Assembly (NCBI RefSeq): GCF_032444005.1
Contig: NC_091283.1
Span: forward strand, 827,514,001 to 827,578,000
Reading direction: 5' to 3'
Origin: Ranitomeya imitator
Lineage: Eukaryota
DNA: 64,000 nucleotides
Shown: positions 14,867 through 57,890 of the stretch, in pieces
Position numbering within the stretch: position 1 is the stretch's first letter
How the letters are laid out: every line of letters starts with the position of its first letter
Program-made: the position numbers and the translations under genes
Notes under the pieces: model-generated
Told to the model about the DNA's origin: nothing
What the model saw: only the letters and a program-made list of their open reading frames with translations
Databases searched by the model: none

Positions 14867-14978
14867 TGCAAATGGTTTCTTCAGAGAGGAAGAGGACCAC
14901 AGCGCTAGCGCCACCTATTGGAAGTCGTGATCCTAAAACTCAATATCGACCTTTTAATGAGCCTTGTCACATGACTTA
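14867..14978 (-). mobile_element. Diverged fragment of the 331-nt retrozyme-like repeat
   Basis: Aligns by eye to 35765-35880: gcaaat..tc(a/t)gaga..aagaggac..tagcgccacct(a/t)ttggaagt..gatcct..tttaa(t/c)gag..atgactta. Confidence 0.6.
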
Positions 14979-27360: not shown

Positions 27361-27459
27361 CTTGGTTGGTTCTGTCAGAACTTAGGGATTATGTGACCGA
27401 ATGGTTCTTGTTGTGCAGACGCTGGAGGGGAGAGATGTGAATCCGGGGCTGCCAGAGGA

Positions 27460-29150
27460 AGCAGGACTCACAGGCTTTCCATGTGGGTTGGGGAAGCAGG
27501 ACTTTCTCTATGAGTGGATGTTGGAAGCAGGACTCACAGGTAGTGTTGAGCATTCCGATACCGAGTTCCGATATTTTTGTGGTATCGGGAATCGGTATCG
27601 GATCCATATTAATGTGTAAAATAAAGAATTAAAATAAAAAATATTGATGTACTTACCTCTCCGGCGGCCCCTGGACATCACCGCTGGTAACCGGCAGCCT
27701 TCTTTGTTTAAAATGAGCGCGTTTAGGGACTTCCATGACGTCACGGCTTCTGATTGGTCGCGTGCCGCTCATGTGACCGCCACGTGACCAATCAGAAGCC
27801 GCAACGTCATTCGCAGGTCCTAAATTCCTAGAATGAGGAGTTTAGGGCCTGAGAATGACATCGCGGCTTGTGATTGGTCGCGTGGCGGTCACATGAGCGG
27901 CACGCGACCAATCAGAAGCCGTGACGTCATGGAAGTCCCTAAACGCGCTCATGTTAAACAAAGAAGCCTGCCGGTTAGCCGCGTGATGTCCAGGGGCCTC
28001 CGGAGAGGTGAGTATATCAATATTTTTTATTTTAATTCTTTATTTTACACATTAATATGGATCCCAGGGCCTGAAGGAGAGTTTCCTCTCCTTCAGACCC
28101 TGGGAACCATCAGGATACCTTCCGATACTTGGTGTCCCATTGACTTGTATTGGTATCGGGTATCGGCGATATCCGATACTTTTCGGGTATCGGCCGATAC
28201 TATCCGATACCGATACTTTCAAGTATCGGACGGTATCGCTCAACACTACTCACAGGTTTTCTATACGAGTGGGTGGAGGAAGCAGGACTCGCAGGCTTTC
28301 TCTATGAGTGGGTGTTGCAAGCAGGACTCACAGGCTTTCTCTATGAGGATGTTGGAAGCAGGACTCACAGGCTTTATGAGTGGGTGTTGGAAGCAGGACT
28401 CACAGGCTTTATGAGTGGGTGTTGGAAGCAGGACTTGCAGGCTTTCTATACGAGTGGGTGAAGGAAGCAGGACTCACAGGCTTTCTCTATGAGTGGATGT
28501 TGAAAGCAGGACTCGCAGGCTTTCTCTATGAGTGGGTGTTGGAAGCAGGACTCACAGGCTTTCTCTGAGTGGATGTTGAAAGCGGGACTCGCAGGCTTTC
28601 TCTATGAGTGGATGTTGAAAGCAGGACTCGCAGGCTTTCTCTATGAGTGGATGTTGGAAGCAGGACTCACAGGCTTTATGAGTGGGTGTTGGAAGCAGGA
28701 CTCACAGGCTTTCTCTATGAGTGGATGTTGGAAGCAGGACTCACAGGCTTTATGAGTGGGTGTTGGAAGCAGGACTCACAGGCTTTCTATATGAGTGGAT
28801 GTTGGAAGCAGGACTCGCAGGCTTTATGACTGGATGTTGGAAGCAGGACTCGCAGGCTTTCTCTATGAGTGGGTGTTGGAAGCAGGACTCACAGGCTTTC
28901 TCTATGAGTGGGTGTTGGAAGCAGGACTCGCAGGCTTTCTCTATGAGTGGGTGTTGGAAGCAGGACTCGCAGGCTTTCTCTATGAGTGGATGTTGGAAGC
29001 AGGACTCACAGGCTTTATGAGTGGATGTTGGAAGCAGGACTCACAGGCTTTATGAGTGGATGTTGGAAGCAGGACTCACGGGCTTTCTCTATGAGTGGAT
29101 GTTGGAAGCAGGACTCGCAGGCTTTCTGGATGAGTGGGTGGATGAGGCAG
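27460..29150. repeat. About 39-bp minisatellite (split by a hAT MITE; relics at 36010-36120)
   Basis: GAGTGG(A/G)TGTTGGAAGCAGGACTC(A/G)CAGGCTTT(CTCT)AT, more than 20 copies. Confidence 0.9.
27541..28248. mobile_element. hAT-type MITE
   Basis: TIRs TAGTGTTGAGC/GCTCAACACTA with an 8-bp TSD CTCACAGG on both sides. Confidence 0.9.
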
Positions 29151-30287
29151 GTAATGGGAAAGGATTTTTTACAGTTTGTGCAGTCAATATGGAATGCCCA
29201 ACGACAAGAGGTAGTAATGGCATACATTAAAACAGCTTTTATAAAATGGCTGAAAGATTTCCTCAACACACATAACATTGTGGGTTATAGTTAAATTAGT
29301 ATGCAAATTGCCTCTTCTGAGAAAAAGAGGACTTAACTCTATAGCGCCACCTTTTGGAAGTAGCGATCCTACAAGTCACAATCAACTCTTTAACCCCTTC
29401 CCGACCTTTGACGCCACGTAGGCGTCATGAAAGTCGGTGCCAATCCGACCCATGACGCCTATGTGGCGTCATGGAAAGATCGCGTCCCTGCAGATCCGGT
29501 GAAAGGGTTAACTCCCATTTCACCCGATCTGCAGGGACAGGGGGAGTGGTAGTTTAGCCCAGGGGGGGTGGCTTCACCCCCTCGTGGCTACGATCGCTCT
29601 GATTGGCTGTTGAAAGTGAAACTGCCAATCAGAGCGATTTGTAATATTTCACCTATTATAACGGGTGAAATATTACAATCCAGCCATGGCCGATGCTGCA
29701 ATATCATCGGCCATGGCTGGAAATACTAATGTGCCCCCACCCCACCGATCGCCCCCCCAGCCCCCCGATCTGGCCGGTACACTGCTCCGGCTCCCCTCCG
29801 TCCAGTGCTCCGCTCCCCCCTGTGCTCTTGTCCACTCCCCCCGTGCTTCAATCACCCCCCCCCCCGTGCTCCAATCACCCCCCCTGCATTCCGATTCACC
29901 CCCCCGTGCTCCGTTCCAGCCCCCCCGTGCTCCGTTCCACGCCCCCCGTGCTCCGTTCCACGCCTGCCGCGCTCCGATTCCCCCCCCCCCCGTGCTCCGA
30001 TCCCCCCCCGTGGTCCCCCCCACCCCATCATACTTACCGATCCTGCCGGGGTCCCGTCCGTCTTCTCCCTGGGCGCCGCCATCTTCCAAAATGGTGGGCG
30101 CATGCGCAGTGCGCCCGCCGAATCTGCCGGCCGGCAGATTCGTTCCAAAGTGCATTTTGATCACTGAGATAGATTATATCTCAGTGATCAAAATAAAAAA
30201 AATAATAAATGACCCCCCCCTTTGTCACCCCCATAGGTAGGGACAATAAAAAAATAAAGAAATTTTTTTTTTCCACTAATGTTAGAA

Positions 30288-31090
30288 TAGGGTTAGGGTT
30301 AGGGGTAGGGTTAGGGGTAGGGTTAGGGGTAGGGTTAGGGTTATTGTTAGGGGTAGGGCTAGGGGTAGGGGTAAGGTTAGGGGTAGGGCTAGGGTTAGGG
30401 TTTCGGTATGTGCACACGTATTCTGGTCCTCTGCGGATTTGATAAATCCGCAGTGCTAAACCGCTGCGGATTTATGGCGGATTTACCGCGTTTTTTTCTG
30501 CGCATTTCACTGCGGTTTTACAATTGCGATTTTCTATTTGAGCAGTTGTAAAACCGCTGTGGAATCCGCACAAAGAAGTGACATGCTGCGGAATGTAAAC
30601 CGCTGCGTTTCCGTGCAGTTTTTCCGCAGCATGTGTACAGCGATTTTTGTTTCCCATAGGTCTATGAAAAACCAAATCCGCTGTGCCCATGGTGCAGAAA
30701 ATACCGTGCGGAAACGCTGCGTTGTATTTTCCGCAGCATGTCAATTCTTTGTGCGGATTCCGCGGCGTTTTACACCTGTTCCTCAATAGGAATCCGCAGG
30801 TGAAATCCGCACAAGAAACACTGGAAATCCGCGGAAAATCCGCAGGTAAAACGCAGTGCCTTTTACCCGCGGATTTTTCAAAAATGGTGCTGAAAAATCT
30901 CACACGAATCCGCAACGTGGGCACATAGCCTTAGGGTTAGGGTTGGAATTAGGGTTGTGGTTAGGGTTAGGGGTGTGTTGGGGTTAGTGTTGTGGTTAGG
31001 GGTGTGTTGGGGTTAGGGTTGTGATTAGGATTATGGCTACAGTTGGGATTAGAGTTAGGGGTGTGTTGGGGTTAGTGTTGGAGGTAGAAT
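30288..31090 (+). repeat. Telomere-like (GGGTTA/GGGGTA)n tracts, split by a nested MITE
   Basis: 30288-30400 and 30931-31090 are degenerate TTAGGG repeats. Confidence 0.85.
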
Positions 31091-34000
31091 TGAGGGGTTA
31101 CCACTGTTTAGGCACATCAGGGGTCTCCAAACGCAACATGGCGCCACCATTGATTCCAGCCAATCTCGTATTCAAAAAGTCAAATGGTGCTCCCTCACTT
31201 CCGAGCCCCGACGTGTGCCCAAACAGTGGTTTACCCCCACATATGGGGTACCAGCATACTCAGGACAAACTGCGCAACAATTACTGGGGTCCAATTTCTC
31301 CTGTTACCCTTGTGAATCTAAAAAAATGCTTGCTAAAACATCATTTTTGAGGAAAGAAAAATGATTTTTTATTTTCACGGCTCTGCGTTGTAAACGTCTG
31401 TGAAGCACTTGGGGGATCAAAGTGCTCACCACATATCTAGATAAGTTCCTTGGGGGGTCTAGTTTCTAAAATGGGGTCACTTGTGGGGGGTTTCTACTGT
31501 TTAGGCACACCAGGGGCTCTGCAAACGCAACGTGATGCCCGCAGACCATTCCATCAAAGTCTGCATTTCAAAAGTCACTACTTCCTTTCTGAGCCCCGAC
31601 GTGTGCCCACACATGGGGTATCAGCGTACTCAGGAGAAACTGGACAACAACTTTTGGGGTCCAATTTCTCCTGTTACCCTTGGGAAAATAAAAAATTCTG
31701 GGCTAAATAATTATTTTTGAGGAAAGAAAACGTATTTATTATTTTCACGGCTCTGCATTATAAACTTCTATGAAGCACTTGGGGGTTCAAAGTGCTCACC
31801 ACACATCTAGATAAGTTCCTTTCGGGGTCTAGTTTCCAAAATGGGGTCACTTGTGGGGGGTTTCTACTGTTTAGGCACATCAGGGGCTCTGCAAACGCAA
31901 CGTGACGCCCGCAGAGCATTCCATCAAAGTCTGCATTTCAAAACGTCACTACTTCACTTCCGAGCCTCGGCATGTGCCCAAACAGTGGTTTACCCCCACA
32001 TATGGGGTATCAGCGTACTCAGGAGAAACAGGACAACAACTTTTGGCGTCCAATTTCTCCTGTTACCCTTGGGAAAATAAAAAATTCTGGGCTAAATAAT
32101 TATTTTTGAGGAAAGAAAACGTATTTATTATTTTCACGGCTCTGCATTATAAACTTCTATGAAGCACTTGGGGGTTCAAAGTGCTCATCACACATCTAGA
32201 TAAGTTCCTTTGGGGGTCTAGTTTCCAAAATGGGGTCACTTGTGGGGGGTTTCTACTGTTAAGCCTCATCAGGGGCTCTGCAAACGCAACGTGACGCCCA
32301 CAGAGCATTCCATCAAAGTCTGCATTTCAAAACGTCACTACTTCACTTCCGAGCCCCGGCATGTGCCCAAACAGTGGTTTACCCCCACATATGGGGTATC
32401 AGCGTACTCAGGAGAAACTGGACAACAACTTTTGGGGTCAAATTTCTCCTGTTACCCTTGGGAAAATAAAAAATTGCAGGCTAAAAGATCATTTTTGAGA
32501 AAATAATTTTTTTTTTTATTTTCATGGCTCTGCGTTATAAACTTCTGTGAAGCACTTGGGGGTTCAAAGTCCTCACCACACATCTAGATTAGTTCCTTTG
32601 GGGGTCTAGTTTCCAAAATGGGGTCATTTCTGGGGGATCTCCAATGTTTAGGCACACAGGGGCTCTCCAAACGTGACATGGTGTCCGCTAATGATTGGAG
32701 CTAATTTTCCATTTAAAAAGCCAAATGGCGTGCCATCCCTTCCGAGCCCTGCCGTGCGCCCAAACAGTGGTTTACCCCCACATATGGGGTATCAGCGTAC
32801 TCAGGACAAACTGGACAACAATATTTGGGGTCCAATTTCTCCTATTATCCTTGGCAAAATAGGAAATTCCAGGCTAAAAAATCATTTTTGAGGAAAGAAA
32901 AATTATTTTTTATTTTCATGGCTCTGCGTTATAAACTTCTGTGAAGCACCTGGGGGTTTAAAGTGCTCAATGTGCATCTAGATAAGTTCCTTGGGTGGTC
33001 TAGTTTCCAAAATGGGGTGACTTGTGGGGGAGCTCCAATGTTTAGGCACACAGGGGCTCTCCAAACGCGACATGGTGTCCGCTAACAATTGGAGCTAATT
33101 TTCCATTCAAAAAGTCAAATGGTGCGCCTTCCCTTCCGAGCCCTGCCGAGTGCCCAAACCCCCACATATGAGGTATCGGCGTACTCGGGAGAAATTGCCC
33201 AACAAATTTTATGATCCATTTTATCCTACTGCCCATGTGAAAATGAAAAAATTGAGGCGAAAAGAATTTTTTTGTGAAAAAAAAGTACTTTTTCATTTTT
33301 ACAGATCAATTTGTGAAGCACCTGAGGGTTTAAAGTGCTCACTAGGCATCTAAATAAGTTCCTTGGGGGGTCTAGTTTCCAAAATGGGGTCACTTGTGGG
33401 GGAGCGCCAATGTTTAGGCACACAGGAGCTATCCAAACGCGACATGGTGTCCGCTAACGATGGAAATAATTTTTCATTCAAAAAGTCAAATGGCGCTCCT
33501 TCCCTTCCGAGCCTTACCATGTGCCCAAACAGTGGTTTACCCCCACAGGTGAGGTATTGGTGTACTCAGGAGAAATTGCCCAACACATTTTAGGATCAAT
33601 TTTATCCTGTTGCCCATGTGAAAATGAAAAAATTGAGGCTAAAAGAATTTTTTTGTGAAAAAAAGTACTTTTTCATTTTTACGGATCAATTTGTGAAGCA
33701 AAGTTCAAAGTGCTCACTATGCATCTAGATAAGTTCCTTGGGGCGTCTAGTTTCCAAAATGGGGTCACTTGTGGGGGAGCTCCAATTTTTAGGCACACGG
33801 GTGCTCTCCAAACGTGACATGGTGTCCGCTAAAGAGTGGAGCCAATTTTTGATTCAAAAAGTCAAATGGCGCTCCTTCCCTTCCAAGCCCTGCCGTGCGC
33901 CCAAACAGTGGTTTACCCCCACATATGAGGTATCAGCGTACTCAGGACAAATTGGACAACAACTTTCGTGGTTCAGTTTCTCCTTTTACCATTGGGAAAA

Positions 34001-34200
34001 TAAAAAAATTGTTGCTAAAAGATAATTTTTGTGACTAAAAAGTTAAATGTTCATTTTTTCCTTCCATGTTGCTTCTGCTGCTGTGAAGCACCTGAAGGTT
34101 TAATAAACTTCTTGAATGTGATTTTGAGTACCTTGAGGGGTGCAGTTTTTAGAATGGTGTCACTTTTGGGTATTTTCAGCCATATAGACCCCTCAAACTG
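31090..34200. repeat. About 370-390-bp tandem subrepeat (about 8 copies) inside the piggyBac-like element
   Basis: CTAGATAAGTTCCTT..GGGGTCTAGTTTCCAAAATGGGGTCAC recurs at about 31437, 31807, 32197, 32585, 32978, 33350 and 33725. Confidence 0.85.
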
Positions 34201-34662
34201 ACTTCAAATGTGAGGTGGTCCCTAAAAAAAATGGTTTTGTAAATTTCGTTGTAAAAATGACAAATCGCTGGTCAAATTTTAACCCTTATAACTTCCTAAC
34301 AAAAAAAAATTTTGTTTCCAAAACTGTGCTGATGTAAAGTAAACATGTGGGAAATGTTATTTATTAACTATTTTGTGTCACATATCTCTCTGGTTTAACA
34401 GAATAAAAATTCAAAATGTGAAAATTGCGAAATTTTCAAAATTTTCGCCAAATTTCCGTTTTTATCACAAATAAACGCAGAATTTATTGACCTAAATTTA
34501 CCACTAACATGAAGCCCAATATGTCACGAAAAAACAATCTCAGAACCGCTAGGATCCGTTGAAGCGTTCCTGAGTTATTACCTCATAAAGGGACACTGGT
34601 CAGAATTGCAAAAAACGGCAAGGTCTTTAAGGTCAAAATAGGCTGGGTCATGAAGGGGTTAA

Positions 34663-35521
34663 AGGGAACCTGTCACCCCGTTTTTTCAGTATGAGATAAA
34701 AATACCGTTAAATAGGGCCTGAGCTGTGCTTTACAATAGGGTATTTTTTGTCCCCTGATTCCCCACCTATGCTGCCGAAATACCTTACAAAAGTCGCCGT
34801 TTTCGCCTGTCAATCAGGCTGGTCTGGTCCAAAGGCGTGGTGACAGCGCTGTTTCTCCCCCACATCTTGCTTATCTTCCTGTTGGTGGCATAGTGCTTCT
34901 CGCATGCGCAAGTGCCTAATGCACTGCGCAGCTGTAGAAAAAGAGTGTGCTCTCTGCTATTCAGCGGTTTCTCAGTGGGCGCGGCCATCTTCCTGAGGCC
35001 GCGCGTGCGCAGATGGTGTCCTGCTTCCTGGGGCTTCAGGAAAATGGCCGCGGGATGCCGCGCGTGCGCAGATGGAGATCACGACGGCCATTTTCCTGAA
35101 GCCGAGATGCGAACTCGGCTTCAGGAAAATGGCCGCCACGATCTCCATCTACGCACGCGCGGCATCCCGCGGCCATTTTCCTGAAGCCCCGGGAAGCAGG
35201 ACACTCCATCTGAGAAACCGCTGAATAGCAGAGAGCACGCTCTTTTTCTACAGCTGCGCAGTGCATTAGGCACTTGCGCATGCGAGAAGCACTACGCCAC
35301 CAACGGGAAGATAAGCAAGATGTGGGGGAGAAACAGCGCTGTCACCACGCCCTTTGGACCAGACCAGCCTGATTGACAGGCGAAAACGGCAACTTTTGTA
35401 AGGTATTTCGGCAGCATAGGTAGGGAATCGGGACAAAAAATACCCTATTGTAAGGCACAGCTCAGGCCCTATTTAACGGTATTTTTATCTCATACTGAAA
35501 AAACGGGGTGACAGGTTCCCT
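34663..35521. mobile_element. Kolobok/T2-type MITE, near-perfect 859-bp foldback
   Basis: TTAA|AGGGAACCTGTCACCCCG...CGGGGTGACAGGTTCCCT|TTAA, with arms of about 430 bp that are inverted copies. Confidence 0.9.
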
Positions 35522-35553
35522 TTAACGAGTCGTGCAATATGACTTAGGATAAA

Positions 35554-35637
35554 AGCCAAATTAGTATCTCAATTCGCAGACACGGTGTTTCGGGCTGTTG
35601 GCCCTCGTCAGTGCGAAGCATGAGAACTAATTTGGCT
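35554..35637 (-). ncRNA. Type I hammerhead ribozyme with extended stem I
   Basis: The minus strand reads TTCGCA-CTGACGA-GGGC caaca GCCC-GAAA-CACCGT-GTC^-TGCGAA, so every core nucleotide is canonical. Stem I extends through TCTCA/TGAGA and AGCCAAATTAGT/ACTAATTTGGCT. Predicted cleavage is between 35579 and 35578. Confidence 0.9.
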
Positions 35638-36472
35638 AGGTGAGAGGCTCTGGACTGGGGTCTAAGGGGTATCGTTTCTCCTTATGGAGTGTGACATACC
35701 ATCTCTGGCTTGTCAAGGTAAGGAGGCTTATTCGCCATGCAATGCTCCTCTGGGAAATATAATATGCAAATTGCCTCTTCTGAGAAAAAGAGGACTTAAC
35801 TCTATAGCGCCACCTTTTGGAAGTAGCGATCCTACAAGTCACAATCAACCCTTTAACGAGTCGTGCAATATGACTTAGGATAAAAGCCAAATCAGTATCT
35901 CAAACTAGTGACACAAATGTATAATTGGTGGAGAAATGTTTACCTTGATGGACCTAGGTCTTTTTTTCAAACTAATATGCAAAAAACATAATTTTCTCAG
36001 ACTTTCTCTGGGTGGATTAAGCAGGAGTCACAGGCTTTCTCTATTAGTGGGTGGAGGAAGCAGGACTCACAGGCTTTCTCTATTGGTCCGTGGATTAAAC
36101 AGGACACAAAGGCTTTCACTAGAAATACTGACAAAGGAAACACAACTTGATACAAGAAAACACTCAAGGAGATCACAGAGAACGTCACATCCCTGAGCTT
36201 AGCATCTCGTCCTTTATTCTCTGCTATCCCAATGTAAAAAAAATTACAGGTCACAGAGATGTATTTAATTATGTGCAGGAGGACACCAACTCCCAACGGA
36301 TGAAAGTGGAAAAAGGCGTGTCCTCATTCCCATAAATCCTACACTGTAGCAACGATCCTCTTCTTTGATATATTAACTCATCAGCAGCATAAAGAACATA
36401 AAGTGCAATGCTTTGACGCCAGGTTACACCTGGGTCTTTTCCACCAGAAATGCGCCTCCGTTTTGAGAAGAC

Positions 36473-37053: not shown

Positions 37054-57890
<20,837 letters not shown>

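What the first reader, a model, noticed from the sequence alone, without database searches (positions are those of the whole stretch)
35554..35637. Canonical hammerhead ribozyme in a 331-nt repeat: a satellite-2-like retrozyme in a frog-type genome
The minus strand has a full catalytic core (CUGACGA, GAAA, GUC), a 4-bp stem II, a near-loopless stem III (ACAC-C-GUGU, typical of dimer-dependent hammerheads) and an about 23-bp stem I with an internal loop after 6 bp. The unit length (331 nt), extended stem I and unstable stem III parallel newt satellite 2 (about 330-bp unit, self-cleaving transcripts), which is described in salamanders. A non-coding, self-cleaving, self-promoting mobile RNA of this kind in an anuran is the best candidate here for an undescribed system. 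Novelty cannot be confirmed without a search.
Basis: partly seen in the sequence, partly recalled or inferred. Interest (0 to 1): 0.9.

Follow-up and report, generated by a model that had tools for sequence, protein, structure and literature searches.

The report
Frog hammerhead retrozyme copy, known kind
This is a real self-cleaving hammerhead RNA motif inside one broken, 1.45-unit copy of a high-copy, non-coding 331-nt retroelement of frogs, a kind of element (non-LTR retrozyme, related to Penelope elements) that is already described in amphibians including frogs, so it is a clean example and not a new system.

Summary
On the minus strand, 35617..35573 is a complete type I hammerhead. It has the core CUGACGA, a 4-bp helix II, GAAA, a weak near-palindromic helix III and GUC. 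Helix I is 6 bp, then an internal loop, then 17 more pairs. It scores 30.6 bits against Rfam Hammerhead_1, just under the gathering score of 34. My descriptor found no equivalent motif in 300 shuffles. Contigs from four related organisms keep the core and show five compensatory pair changes, two in helix II and three in helix I.

The locus is not a tandem array. It is one insertion of 479 nt, or 1.45 units, running 35903..35522 and then 29393..29293. Two later TTAA-targeted transposon insertions, 6.1 kb together, split it. It carries a single hammerhead, and helix III should need a partner, so this copy is probably inert.

The claim of novelty fails. Canonical and minimal hammerheads are published for Xenopus. 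Non-LTR retrozymes are reported in all seven amphibians sampled in a 2026 preprint, with a mean unit of 316 bp. This scan has already logged many hammerhead-bearing elements on other DNA of this genome.

Not shown here: cleavage, circular RNA, transcription, or the mobilising Penelope element. I class it as a new member of a known kind, of low interest.

The parts
35573..35617 (-). Type I hammerhead ribozyme: 6-bp helix I, core, helix II, helix III and the GUC site. Cleavage is predicted between 35579 and 35578.
   Evidence: Rfam Hammerhead_1 full-length match, 30.6 bits, E 3e-6. Only hit of my descriptor in the window, with 0 of 300 shuffles matching it.
35554..35637 (-). Hammerhead with extended helix I: 23 bp, a 3x1 internal loop after 6 bp and one bulged U.
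   Evidence: Fold -35.6 kcal/mol, z -6.0. Compensatory changes at pairs 35615/35575, 35629/35562 and 35626/35565 in contigs of related organisms.
35522..35903 (-). Piece B of the retrozyme insertion: its 5' end at 35903, one full unit, and the start of the second unit up to a TTAA at 35522-35525.
   Evidence: 55-nt direct repeat 35849-35903 = 35518-35572, spacing 331. Contig depth drops about tenfold beyond 35905.
29293..29393 (-). Piece A of the same insertion. The second unit continues directly after the TTAA (29390-29393) and ends at ...CAATTTGCAT (29293).
   Evidence: 97% identical to 35755-35857, same strand. The sequence was read.
35733..35771 (-). Octamer ATTTGCAT (35771..35764), a 6-nt spacer (35763..35758), then an SPH-like motif beginning TTTCCCAGA (35757..35733), all inside the unit. 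The octamer is also where the insertion's 3' end falls in the second unit.
   Evidence: Pattern found once, with 0 of 100 shuffles matching. A similar module is seen by eye in the axolotl Ax330 clone printed in the supplement of PMC7229834. Function was not tested.
34663..35521 (.). Later nested insertion 1: an 859-bp palindromic MITE with terminal inverted repeats starting AGGGAACCTGTCACC and TTAA duplications at 34659-34662 and 35522-35525. It is not part of the retrozyme.
   Evidence: Inverted repeats I1-I4, sequence. Many contigs with diverse flanks end at 35525.
29394..34658 (.). Later nested insertion 2: a 5.27-kb TTAA-flanked element with ends CCCCTTC.../...GAAGGGG. It carries telomere-like repeats and a 389-bp x 7.3 tandem array. 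It is not part of the retrozyme.
   Evidence: Sequence at both ends. Tandem arrays.
14867..14978 (-). Diverged partial relative, 75% identical, covering unit positions 32-145. Its similarity also stops at ...CATTTGCA.
   Evidence: BLAST, local alignment, sequence.

Best explanation
The locus is one old insertion of a non-autonomous, non-coding hammerhead retroelement, a non-LTR retrozyme of the kind derived from or mobilised by Penelope-like elements. The family works as published for this class, and that part is inferred here. Transcripts longer than one unit are made. Two hammerheads pair through the near-palindromic helix III (ACAC-C-GUGU) to form active dimers that cut after GUC. [quoted passage not shown] A host RNA ligase circularises them. 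A Penelope-type reverse transcriptase then copies linear multimers or circles into cDNA longer than one unit, which integrates by target-primed reverse transcription. What is shown here is narrower. The motif is a complete canonical type I hammerhead. Its core is invariant and its helices covary across related frogs. The unit is a high-copy dispersed repeat shared by at least four organisms. Some contigs cross unit-to-unit junctions. This copy is 479 nt (1.45 units), begins 6 nt 3' of the cleavage site and ends in the octamer. It carries only one hammerhead and was later split by two TTAA-specific DNA-transposon insertions. The copy itself is most likely inert.
For: Motif and statistics. Cross-species conservation comes from depth-weighted contig variants in organisms A-D. 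Helix II pair 35601/35595 changes C-G to G-C (76%/63% in organism B). That change is linked within single contigs, read from the loose ends at 35583 and 35584. Helix II pair 35602/35594 changes G-C to A-U (72%/75% in C, 66%/66% in D). Helix I pair 35615/35575 changes C-G to U-A (95-100% in B, C and D). Pair 35629/35562 changes U-A to C-G (75-100%). Pair 35626/35565 changes U-A to A-U (64-95%). N7 varies freely between C and U. Among the variants listed, no other strictly invariant core position varies at 5% or more, except C17 in two contigs of one run. G10.1 (35604) and C11.1 (35592), the base pair of helix II, vary in 2-14% of depth. Family repetitiveness: 286-1417 contigs per run laid on the 651-nt stretch at 85-99% identity. 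Unit junctions: joints going back 331, 322 and 309+23 nt. Non-coding: the longest open frame in a dimer is 87 codons, and the 331-nt circle folds at -98.1 kcal/mol, z -4.3. Dimer dependence: helix III adds nothing to the monomer, and the homodimer gains -8.8 kcal/mol. Insertion anatomy. Literature for the class and its presence in frogs: PMC7229834, PMC4209133, PMC7761336 and bioRxiv 10.64898/2026.07.22.740005.
Against: The Rfam score is 3.4 bits under the family's gathering score. No cleavage, circular RNA or strand-specific transcription is shown. The runs are Logan contigs flagged 'RNA?', and their summed depth could come from genomic DNA or intronic read-through multiplied by copy number. 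Contig joints cannot tell circles from genomic tandems. Most covariation is inferred from matching frequencies, not from linked reads, and 14 variant rows were hidden. No Penelope reverse transcriptase or GIY-YIG gene is in the window; the only RT is a LINE with an AP endonuclease. The possible 6-bp target duplication (ACTAGT at 35904-35909, ATTAGT at 29287-29292 on the + strand) has a mismatch and is weak.
Confidence: 0.8

Rival explanations
1. The sequence is the pseudo-LTR remnant of a 5'-truncated autonomous Penelope-like element, not an independent non-autonomous retrozyme. The hammerhead would then be the PLE's own pLTR ribozyme.
For: PLE insertions are usually 5'-truncated and keep a terminal repeat. 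Retrozyme families in Xenopus are sister to PLE pLTRs. Here the family appears to have a fixed 3' end at the octamer. Two copies stop there, contig depth is 3-4 times higher just upstream of it, and loose ends fall at 35758-35767. That is the profile of a retroelement truncated from the 5' side.
Against: No RT or GIY-YIG coding sequence adjoins the copy, and the 1.45 units are contiguous once the nested insertions are removed. The motif is the canonical form, with helix I of 6 bp, helix II of 4 bp and a short helix III. PMC4209133 contrasts this with the minimal PLE hammerheads, which have helix II of 7-8 bp, helix I of 4-5 bp and no helix III. Unit-to-unit junction contigs exist.
Confidence: 0.13
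2. The unit is an ordinary satellite spread only by unequal crossing-over or segmental duplication. The hammerhead would then be a passenger with no role in mobility.
For: Newt satellite 2 was first described as a satellite. Multimers concentrate near telomeres and centromeres in Xenopus.
Against: This copy is an isolated 1.45-mer sitting between blocks of an unrelated 39-bp minisatellite. Partial relatives lie elsewhere in the window with different flanks. The hammerhead helices covary while the core stays fixed across organisms, which argues for selection on the RNA.
Confidence: 0.04
3. The hammerhead-like motif arose by chance in repeat DNA.
For: The score is below the Rfam gathering threshold. 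The relaxed descriptor hits 5.7% of shuffled windows.
Against: No shuffle of 300 reached the observed helix lengths. The E-value scaled to the whole window is about 1.5e-3. Five compensatory pair changes accompany an invariant core in four organisms.
Confidence: 0.01

Closest known systems
Non-LTR retrozymes of amphibians: axolotl Rtz_331/Rtz_353 and newt/salamander satellite 2
   Same: The unit is about 331 nt, the same length as axolotl Rtz_331. It is non-coding. It has a canonical type I hammerhead with a 6-bp helix I followed by a loop and a 4-bp helix II. Helix III is weak and palindromic, which makes cleavage dimer-dependent (PMC7229834). An octamer-like motif plus a TCCC...TTGCA(A)TGGCG module lies downstream of the ribozyme in both, seen by eye against the Ax330 clone. 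Newt satellite 2 is reported to use an snRNA-type promoter (cited in PMC2220036).
   Different: No overall sequence alignment to the salamander units was run, so orthology is not shown. The octamer starts about 138 nt after the cleavage site here and about 87 nt after it in Ax330. Helix III here is ACAC-C-GUGU, closer to HHR_Amex2 (ACACGUGU) than to HHR_Amex1. This locus is a 1.45-mer, not a long array.
Xenopus non-LTR retrozyme families, including REP4_XT (Li, Clavereau & Pollet 2026 preprint)
   Same: Anuran host. The amphibian mean unit is 316 bp. Copies occur as monomers, dimers and multimers. The families are related to PLE pLTRs. A REP4 dimer from X. tropicalis cleaves in vitro.
   Different: The host appears to be a different frog lineage, a poison frog according to earlier follow-ups in this scan.
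Penelope-like element pLTR hammerheads (Cervera & de la Pena 2014)
   Same: Type I hammerhead in a direct terminal repeat of a retroelement. Insertions are truncated from the 5' side and longer than one unit. The ribozyme is expected to work as a dimer.
   Different: PLE minimal hammerheads lack helix III and have a longer helix II and a shorter helix I. No RT or GIY-YIG ORF is present here.

Membership tests
Hammerhead ribozyme, type I (Rfam RF00163) | Conserved core C3 U4 G5 A6 N7 G8 A9, G12 A13 A14, the A15.1-U16.1 pair, H17 (not G), and the G10.1-C11.1 pair | tested here: met
   All are present at 35611..35605, 35591..35588, 35580, 35579 and 35604/35592. Across four organisms the strictly conserved positions show no listed variant of 5% or more, apart from C17 in two contigs. 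The G10.1-C11.1 pair shows minor variants of 2-14% of depth.
Hammerhead ribozyme, type I (Rfam RF00163) | Three helices around the core, with helix I open-ended | tested here: met
   Helix I has 6 + 17 bp and helix II has 4 bp. Helix III has 2-3 bp as a monomer or 8 bp as a dimer. Five pairs in helices I and II show compensatory changes.
Hammerhead ribozyme, type I (Rfam RF00163) | Score at or above the curated gathering threshold (34 bits) | tested here: not met
   The score is 30.6 bits, full-length, E 3e-6 on 131 nt. There is no hit at gathering on the whole window. The shortfall comes from helix II and loop letters that differ from the seed consensus, not from the core.
Hammerhead ribozyme, type I (Rfam RF00163) | Self-cleavage 3' of position 17 | not testable with these tools
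   This needs in vitro transcription of monomer and dimer constructs.
Metazoan non-LTR retrozyme | A 170-400-nt non-coding unit carrying one type I hammerhead, with no LTR, PBS or PPT | tested here: met
   The unit is 331 nt. The longest open frame in a dimer is 87 codons. One hammerhead per unit.
Metazoan non-LTR retrozyme | Tandem (multimeric) genomic copies | tested here: inconclusive
   This locus holds only 1.45 units. Contigs with joints going back 331, 322 and 332 nt show that unit-to-unit junctions exist somewhere, as tandems or as circles.
Metazoan non-LTR retrozyme | Expression as linear and circular monomer RNA | not testable with these tools
   Only assembled contigs of runs guessed to be RNA were available. 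Depth and joints do not separate RNA from DNA, or circles from tandems.
Metazoan non-LTR retrozyme | Stable, highly self-paired monomer fold | tested here: met
   The circular MFE is -98.1 kcal/mol, z -4.3 against 200 shuffles, with 59% of bases paired. The fold is branched rather than rod-like.
Penelope-like element (autonomous) | An ORF with a telomerase-like RT and a GIY-YIG endonuclease between the terminal repeats | tested here: not met
   No such ORF adjoins the unit. The only RT in the window (50396-52045) pairs with an AP-type endonuclease (49000-50361), which makes it a LINE.
Salamander satellite 2 / Rtz_331 lineage | Sequence homology of the whole unit to the salamander units | not tested
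Only short motifs were compared by eye.

The most novel reading that the evidence does not exclude
The frog family may be a direct relative of salamander satellite 2 / Rtz_331. It would keep the same unit length and the same internal snRNA-type promoter module: octamer, then 8 nt, then TCCC, and further on TTGCA(A)TGGCG. That would make it a self-transcribing retrozyme lineage older than the frog-salamander split. It would also have a fixed 3' terminus inside the octamer, making it a miniature Penelope-style element with terminal repeats rather than a plain satellite.
Probability: 0.15. Interest if true: 0.45.

Novelty: new member of a known kind. Interest (0 to 1): 0.2.

Why it matters
The copy is a well-resolved example of an amphibian hammerhead retrozyme. 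It has a full canonical ribozyme, comparative support for its helices from four related frogs, and a datable history: insertion first, then two TTAA-targeted transposon hits at the same site. It adds a frog lineage outside Xenopus to a class that is already published. It also gives two small leads for specialists. One is an apparently fixed 3' end at the octamer. The other is a 5' end 6 nt from the cleavage site. Both bear on whether linear cleaved multimers or circles are the template for reverse transcription. It does not open a new system.

Tried and rejected
1. The whole-window Rfam scan at gathering scores gave no hit. A 1.5-kb E-value scan listed only spurious miRNA-like matches to the neighbouring palindromic MITE and missed the hammerhead. 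Only the 131-nt scan showed it.
2. I looked for a second, diverged unit upstream of 35903. The local alignment score of 29 is not convincing, even though GTGTC sits in register at 35914..35910. I rejected a tandem array at this locus.
3. I looked for a Penelope ORF in the window and found none.
4. Two metagenome scans for the hammerhead pattern were run. The specific pattern gave 0 hits. The relaxed pattern gave three unrelated loci. Two are other type I hammerheads with the same ACAC-N-GUGU helix III, one of them repeated 281 nt apart. None is a family member.
5. The Coats et al. 1994 paper on the newt satellite 2 promoter is not held.
7. I did not run a full alignment to the axolotl Ax330/Ax353 clones, because the letters have no reference.
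8. The host gene, its strand, and whether the copy is intronic were not determined.

Full report
**1. The observation**

- The core is C3-A9 = CUGACGA at 35611..35605. Position 7 is the free position.
- Helix II is GGGC/GCCC, closed by the loop CAACA (35604-35592), and includes the conserved G10.1-C11.1 pair.
- G12 A13 A14 and A15.1 lie at 35591..35588.
- Helix III is ACAC-C-GUGU at 35588..35580.
- C17 is 35579, so cleavage would fall between 35579 and 35578.
- Helix I has 6 pairs (35617-35612 with 35578-35573), then a 3x1 internal loop, then 5 + 12 further pairs with one bulged U. That makes 23 pairs.

The 84-nt stretch folds at -35.6 kcal/mol, z -6.0, and none of 200 shuffles is as stable.

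Rfam Hammerhead_1 aligns over its full length (1-45/45) at 30.6 bits, E 3e-6 in a 131-nt search. That is 3.4 bits under the gathering score. This explains why the whole-window scan at gathering lists nothing. The 1.5-kb E-value scan also lost it to the speed filters.

A descriptor I wrote finds exactly one hit in the 64 kb on either strand. It requires the core, helix II of at least 3 bp, GAAA, U16.1, H17 and helix I of at least 4 bp. In 300 locally dinucleotide-shuffled windows, none had helix I of at least 6 bp with helix II of at least 4 bp. The relaxed form hit 5.7% of the shuffled windows. The motif is real and not a chance product.

**2. Comparative support**

The unit is held by public runs of at least five coded organisms. 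I laid contigs from four of them on the ribozyme. This gives depth-weighted variant frequencies. Five helix pairs change on both sides with matching frequencies.
- Helix II pair 35601/35595 goes from C-G to G-C (76%/63% in organism B).
- Helix II pair 35602/35594 goes from G-C to A-U (72%/75% in C, 66%/66% in D).
- Helix I pair 35615/35575 goes from C-G to U-A (95-100% in B, C and D; 18-29% in A).
- Helix I pair 35629/35562 goes from U-A to C-G (75-100% everywhere).
- Helix I pair 35626/35565 goes from U-A to A-U (64-95% in B-D).

For the first pair the two changes are seen linked in single contigs. The loose ends at 35583 (X10) and 35584 (X15) read as CUGAUGA-GGGG-CAACA-CCCC-GAAAC.

N7 varies freely between C and U. 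Among the variants listed, the other strictly invariant core positions show none at 5% or more, apart from C17 in two contigs of one run. G10.1 (35604) and C11.1 (35592), the base pair of helix II, vary in 2-14% of depth.

There are three caveats. Most linkage is inferred from frequencies. Depth sums many copies. Fourteen rows were not displayed.

**3. What the locus is**

The '331-nt repeat' is the spacing of a 55-nt direct repeat, 35518-35572 and 35849-35903, 98% identical. It is not an array.

Reading the minus strand, similarity to the family starts at 35903. That is 6 nt 3' of where the cleavage site would lie in unit register. The sequence runs through one full unit with the hammerhead and into a second unit as far as a TTAA at 35522-35525.

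An 859-bp palindromic MITE sits there (34663-35521). Its terminal inverted repeats start AGGGAACCTGTCACC, and the TTAA is duplicated at 34659-34662. Immediately beside it lies a second TTAA-flanked element of 5.27 kb (29394-34658). Its ends are CCCCTTC... and ...GAAGGGG, and it holds telomere-like repeats and a 389-bp array.

Directly after the TTAA at 29390-29393 the second unit resumes. It runs 29389..29293 at 97% identity to 35755-35857 and stops at ...CAATTTGCAT.

With the two nested insertions removed, the original insertion is 479 nt, or 1.45 units, and carries a single hammerhead. It sits between blocks of an unrelated 39-bp minisatellite, at 36009-36125 and about 28250-29151. So it entered older repeat DNA. 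A possible 6-bp target duplication exists on the + strand: ATTAGT at 29287-29292 and ACTAGT at 35904-35909. It has one mismatch and is weak evidence.

**4. The family**

Each run laid 286-1417 contigs on the 651-nt stretch at 85-99% identity. Depth falls about tenfold beyond 35905. Some contigs cross from the end of one unit into the start of the next, with joints going back 331, 322 and 309+23 nt. These come either from genomic tandems or from circles.

Depth is 3-4 times higher over 35764-35860 than over the rest of the unit. Loose ends cluster at 35758-35767. A 75%-identical partial relative at 14978..14867 also stops at ...CATTTGCA. Together these observations suggest a family with a fixed 3' terminus at the octamer and variable 5' truncation. 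That is the signature of target-primed reverse transcription. A related family sharing only that segment could give the same depth profile.

The unit is non-coding, with a longest open frame of 87 codons in a dimer. As a 331-nt circle it folds at -98.1 kcal/mol, z -4.3, with 59% of bases paired.

**5. How it most likely works**

Helix III adds nothing to the monomer. The fold is -31.9 to -32.3 kcal/mol with helix III and -32.7 kcal/mol without it. Two copies of the segment pair over 8 bp with a central C/C mismatch, at -8.8 kcal/mol. This is the dimer-dependent design described for newt and axolotl hammerheads (PMC7229834, PMC4209133).

The mechanism I commit to is the published retrozyme cycle (PMC7761336):
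1. Transcription of more than one unit.
2. Dimeric self-cleavage after GUC.
3. [quoted passage not shown]
4. Ligation to circles by a host RNA ligase.
5. Reverse transcription by a Penelope-type RT into cDNA longer than one unit.
6. Integration into new loci.

What is shown here is the ribozyme anatomy, its conservation and covariation, repetitiveness across species, the unit junctions, and the 1.45-unit insertion. What is inferred is cleavage, circularisation, transcription and the mobilising enzyme. The runs are only guessed to be RNA, and depth could reflect DNA multiplied by copy number.

With one hammerhead and a 6.1-kb interruption, this particular copy is probably inert.

**6. The promoter idea**

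The unit holds ATTTGCAT followed 6 nt later by TTTCCCAGA... (35771..35733). The pattern occurs once, and none of 100 shuffles matched it. The pattern was chosen after seeing the sequence.

The axolotl Ax330 clone is printed in the supplement of PMC7229834. By eye it has a similar module: ATTTGCAC, then 8 nt, then TCCCC, then TTGCAATGGCG. Counted the same way, the frog has 8 nt between the octamer and TCCC. Newt satellite 2 is reported to use an snRNA-type promoter (cited in PMC2220036).

This resemblance is a lead, not a test. The octamer is also the apparent 3' end of the insertion.

**7. Comparison with what is known, and novelty**

- Canonical metazoan type I hammerheads are defined as helix I of 6 bp, helix II of 4 bp and a short palindromic helix III. 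This motif fits that definition.
- It does not fit the minimal Penelope form, which has helix II of 7-8 bp and no helix III.
- No RT/GIY-YIG ORF is present. The window's only RT belongs to a LINE with an AP endonuclease.
- The class is documented in frogs. About 9,000 minimal hammerheads were reported in X. tropicalis (PMC4209133).
- A 2026 preprint found non-LTR retrozymes in all seven amphibians sampled. The mean unit was 316 bp. There were 57 Xenopus families related to Penelope pLTRs. One REP4 dimer from X. tropicalis cleaved in vitro.
- Axolotl Rtz_331 has the same unit length.
- Earlier notes of this scan record many hammerhead-bearing elements on other DNA of this genome. Two were followed up as ordinary retrozymes in a poison frog.

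The finding is a new member of a known kind.

**8. Limits**

- I could not search Repbase or Dfam.
- I could not align the unit to the salamander units.
- I could not see raw reads.
- I did not determine the host gene or its strand.

Noticed in passing
window 34663-35521: An 859-bp near-perfect palindromic MITE with arms 92-99% complementary, terminal inverted repeats starting AGGGAACCTGTCACC and a TTAA target duplication. It is high-copy in organism A's contigs, with diverse flanks, but has zero depth in organism B (35400-35487). It therefore looks younger or more lineage-restricted than the retrozyme. It also produces spurious miRNA-family matches in Rfam E-value mode.
   Followed up: partly
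window 29394-34658: A 5.27-kb TTAA-flanked element with ends CCCCTTC.../...GAAGGGG. It was inserted at the same TTAA as the MITE. It carries telomere-like (TAGGGT)n tracts at 30288-31081 and a 389-bp tandem array of 7.3 copies at 31195-34007. This may be a non-autonomous piggyBac-type carrier of satellite DNA.
   Followed up: partly
window 36009-36125 and about 28250-29151 (also 27455-27540): A 39-bp minisatellite (unit TGGGTGGATTAAGCAGGA.TCACAGGCTTTCTCTATTAG) lies on both sides of the retrozyme insertion, with about 3 copies on one side and more than 20 on the other. The retrozyme therefore landed inside or beside an older repeat-bearing element.
   Followed up: partly
window 49000-52045 (+): Two adjacent ORFs of a LINE: an AP-type endonuclease (Exo_endo_phos, 453 aa) and a reverse transcriptase (RVT_1, 549 aa). 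It is not a Penelope element.
   Followed up: partly
window 14867-14978 (-): A 75%-identical partial relative of the retrozyme unit (unit positions 32-145). Its similarity ends at the same ATTTGCA as the main copy's 3' end. No hammerhead lies beside it.
   Followed up: partly
L001 2643-2956 and L002 949-981 (metagenome contigs): These are unrelated type I hammerheads with the same ACAC-N-GUGU helix III and a GUCC/GGAC helix II. In L001 (a marine metagenome assembly) two copies lie 281 nt apart, so they are probably retrozymes of another organism, perhaps an invertebrate. This form of helix III is therefore not special to frogs.
   Followed up: no
window 35904-35971: The stretch just 5' of the insertion is itself repeated in the contigs. 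Depth is high over 35928-35971 and near zero over 35972-35993. Other copies continue differently after 35966 (loose-end consensus CAACCTATGTAA...). The host repeat was not identified.
   Followed up: no
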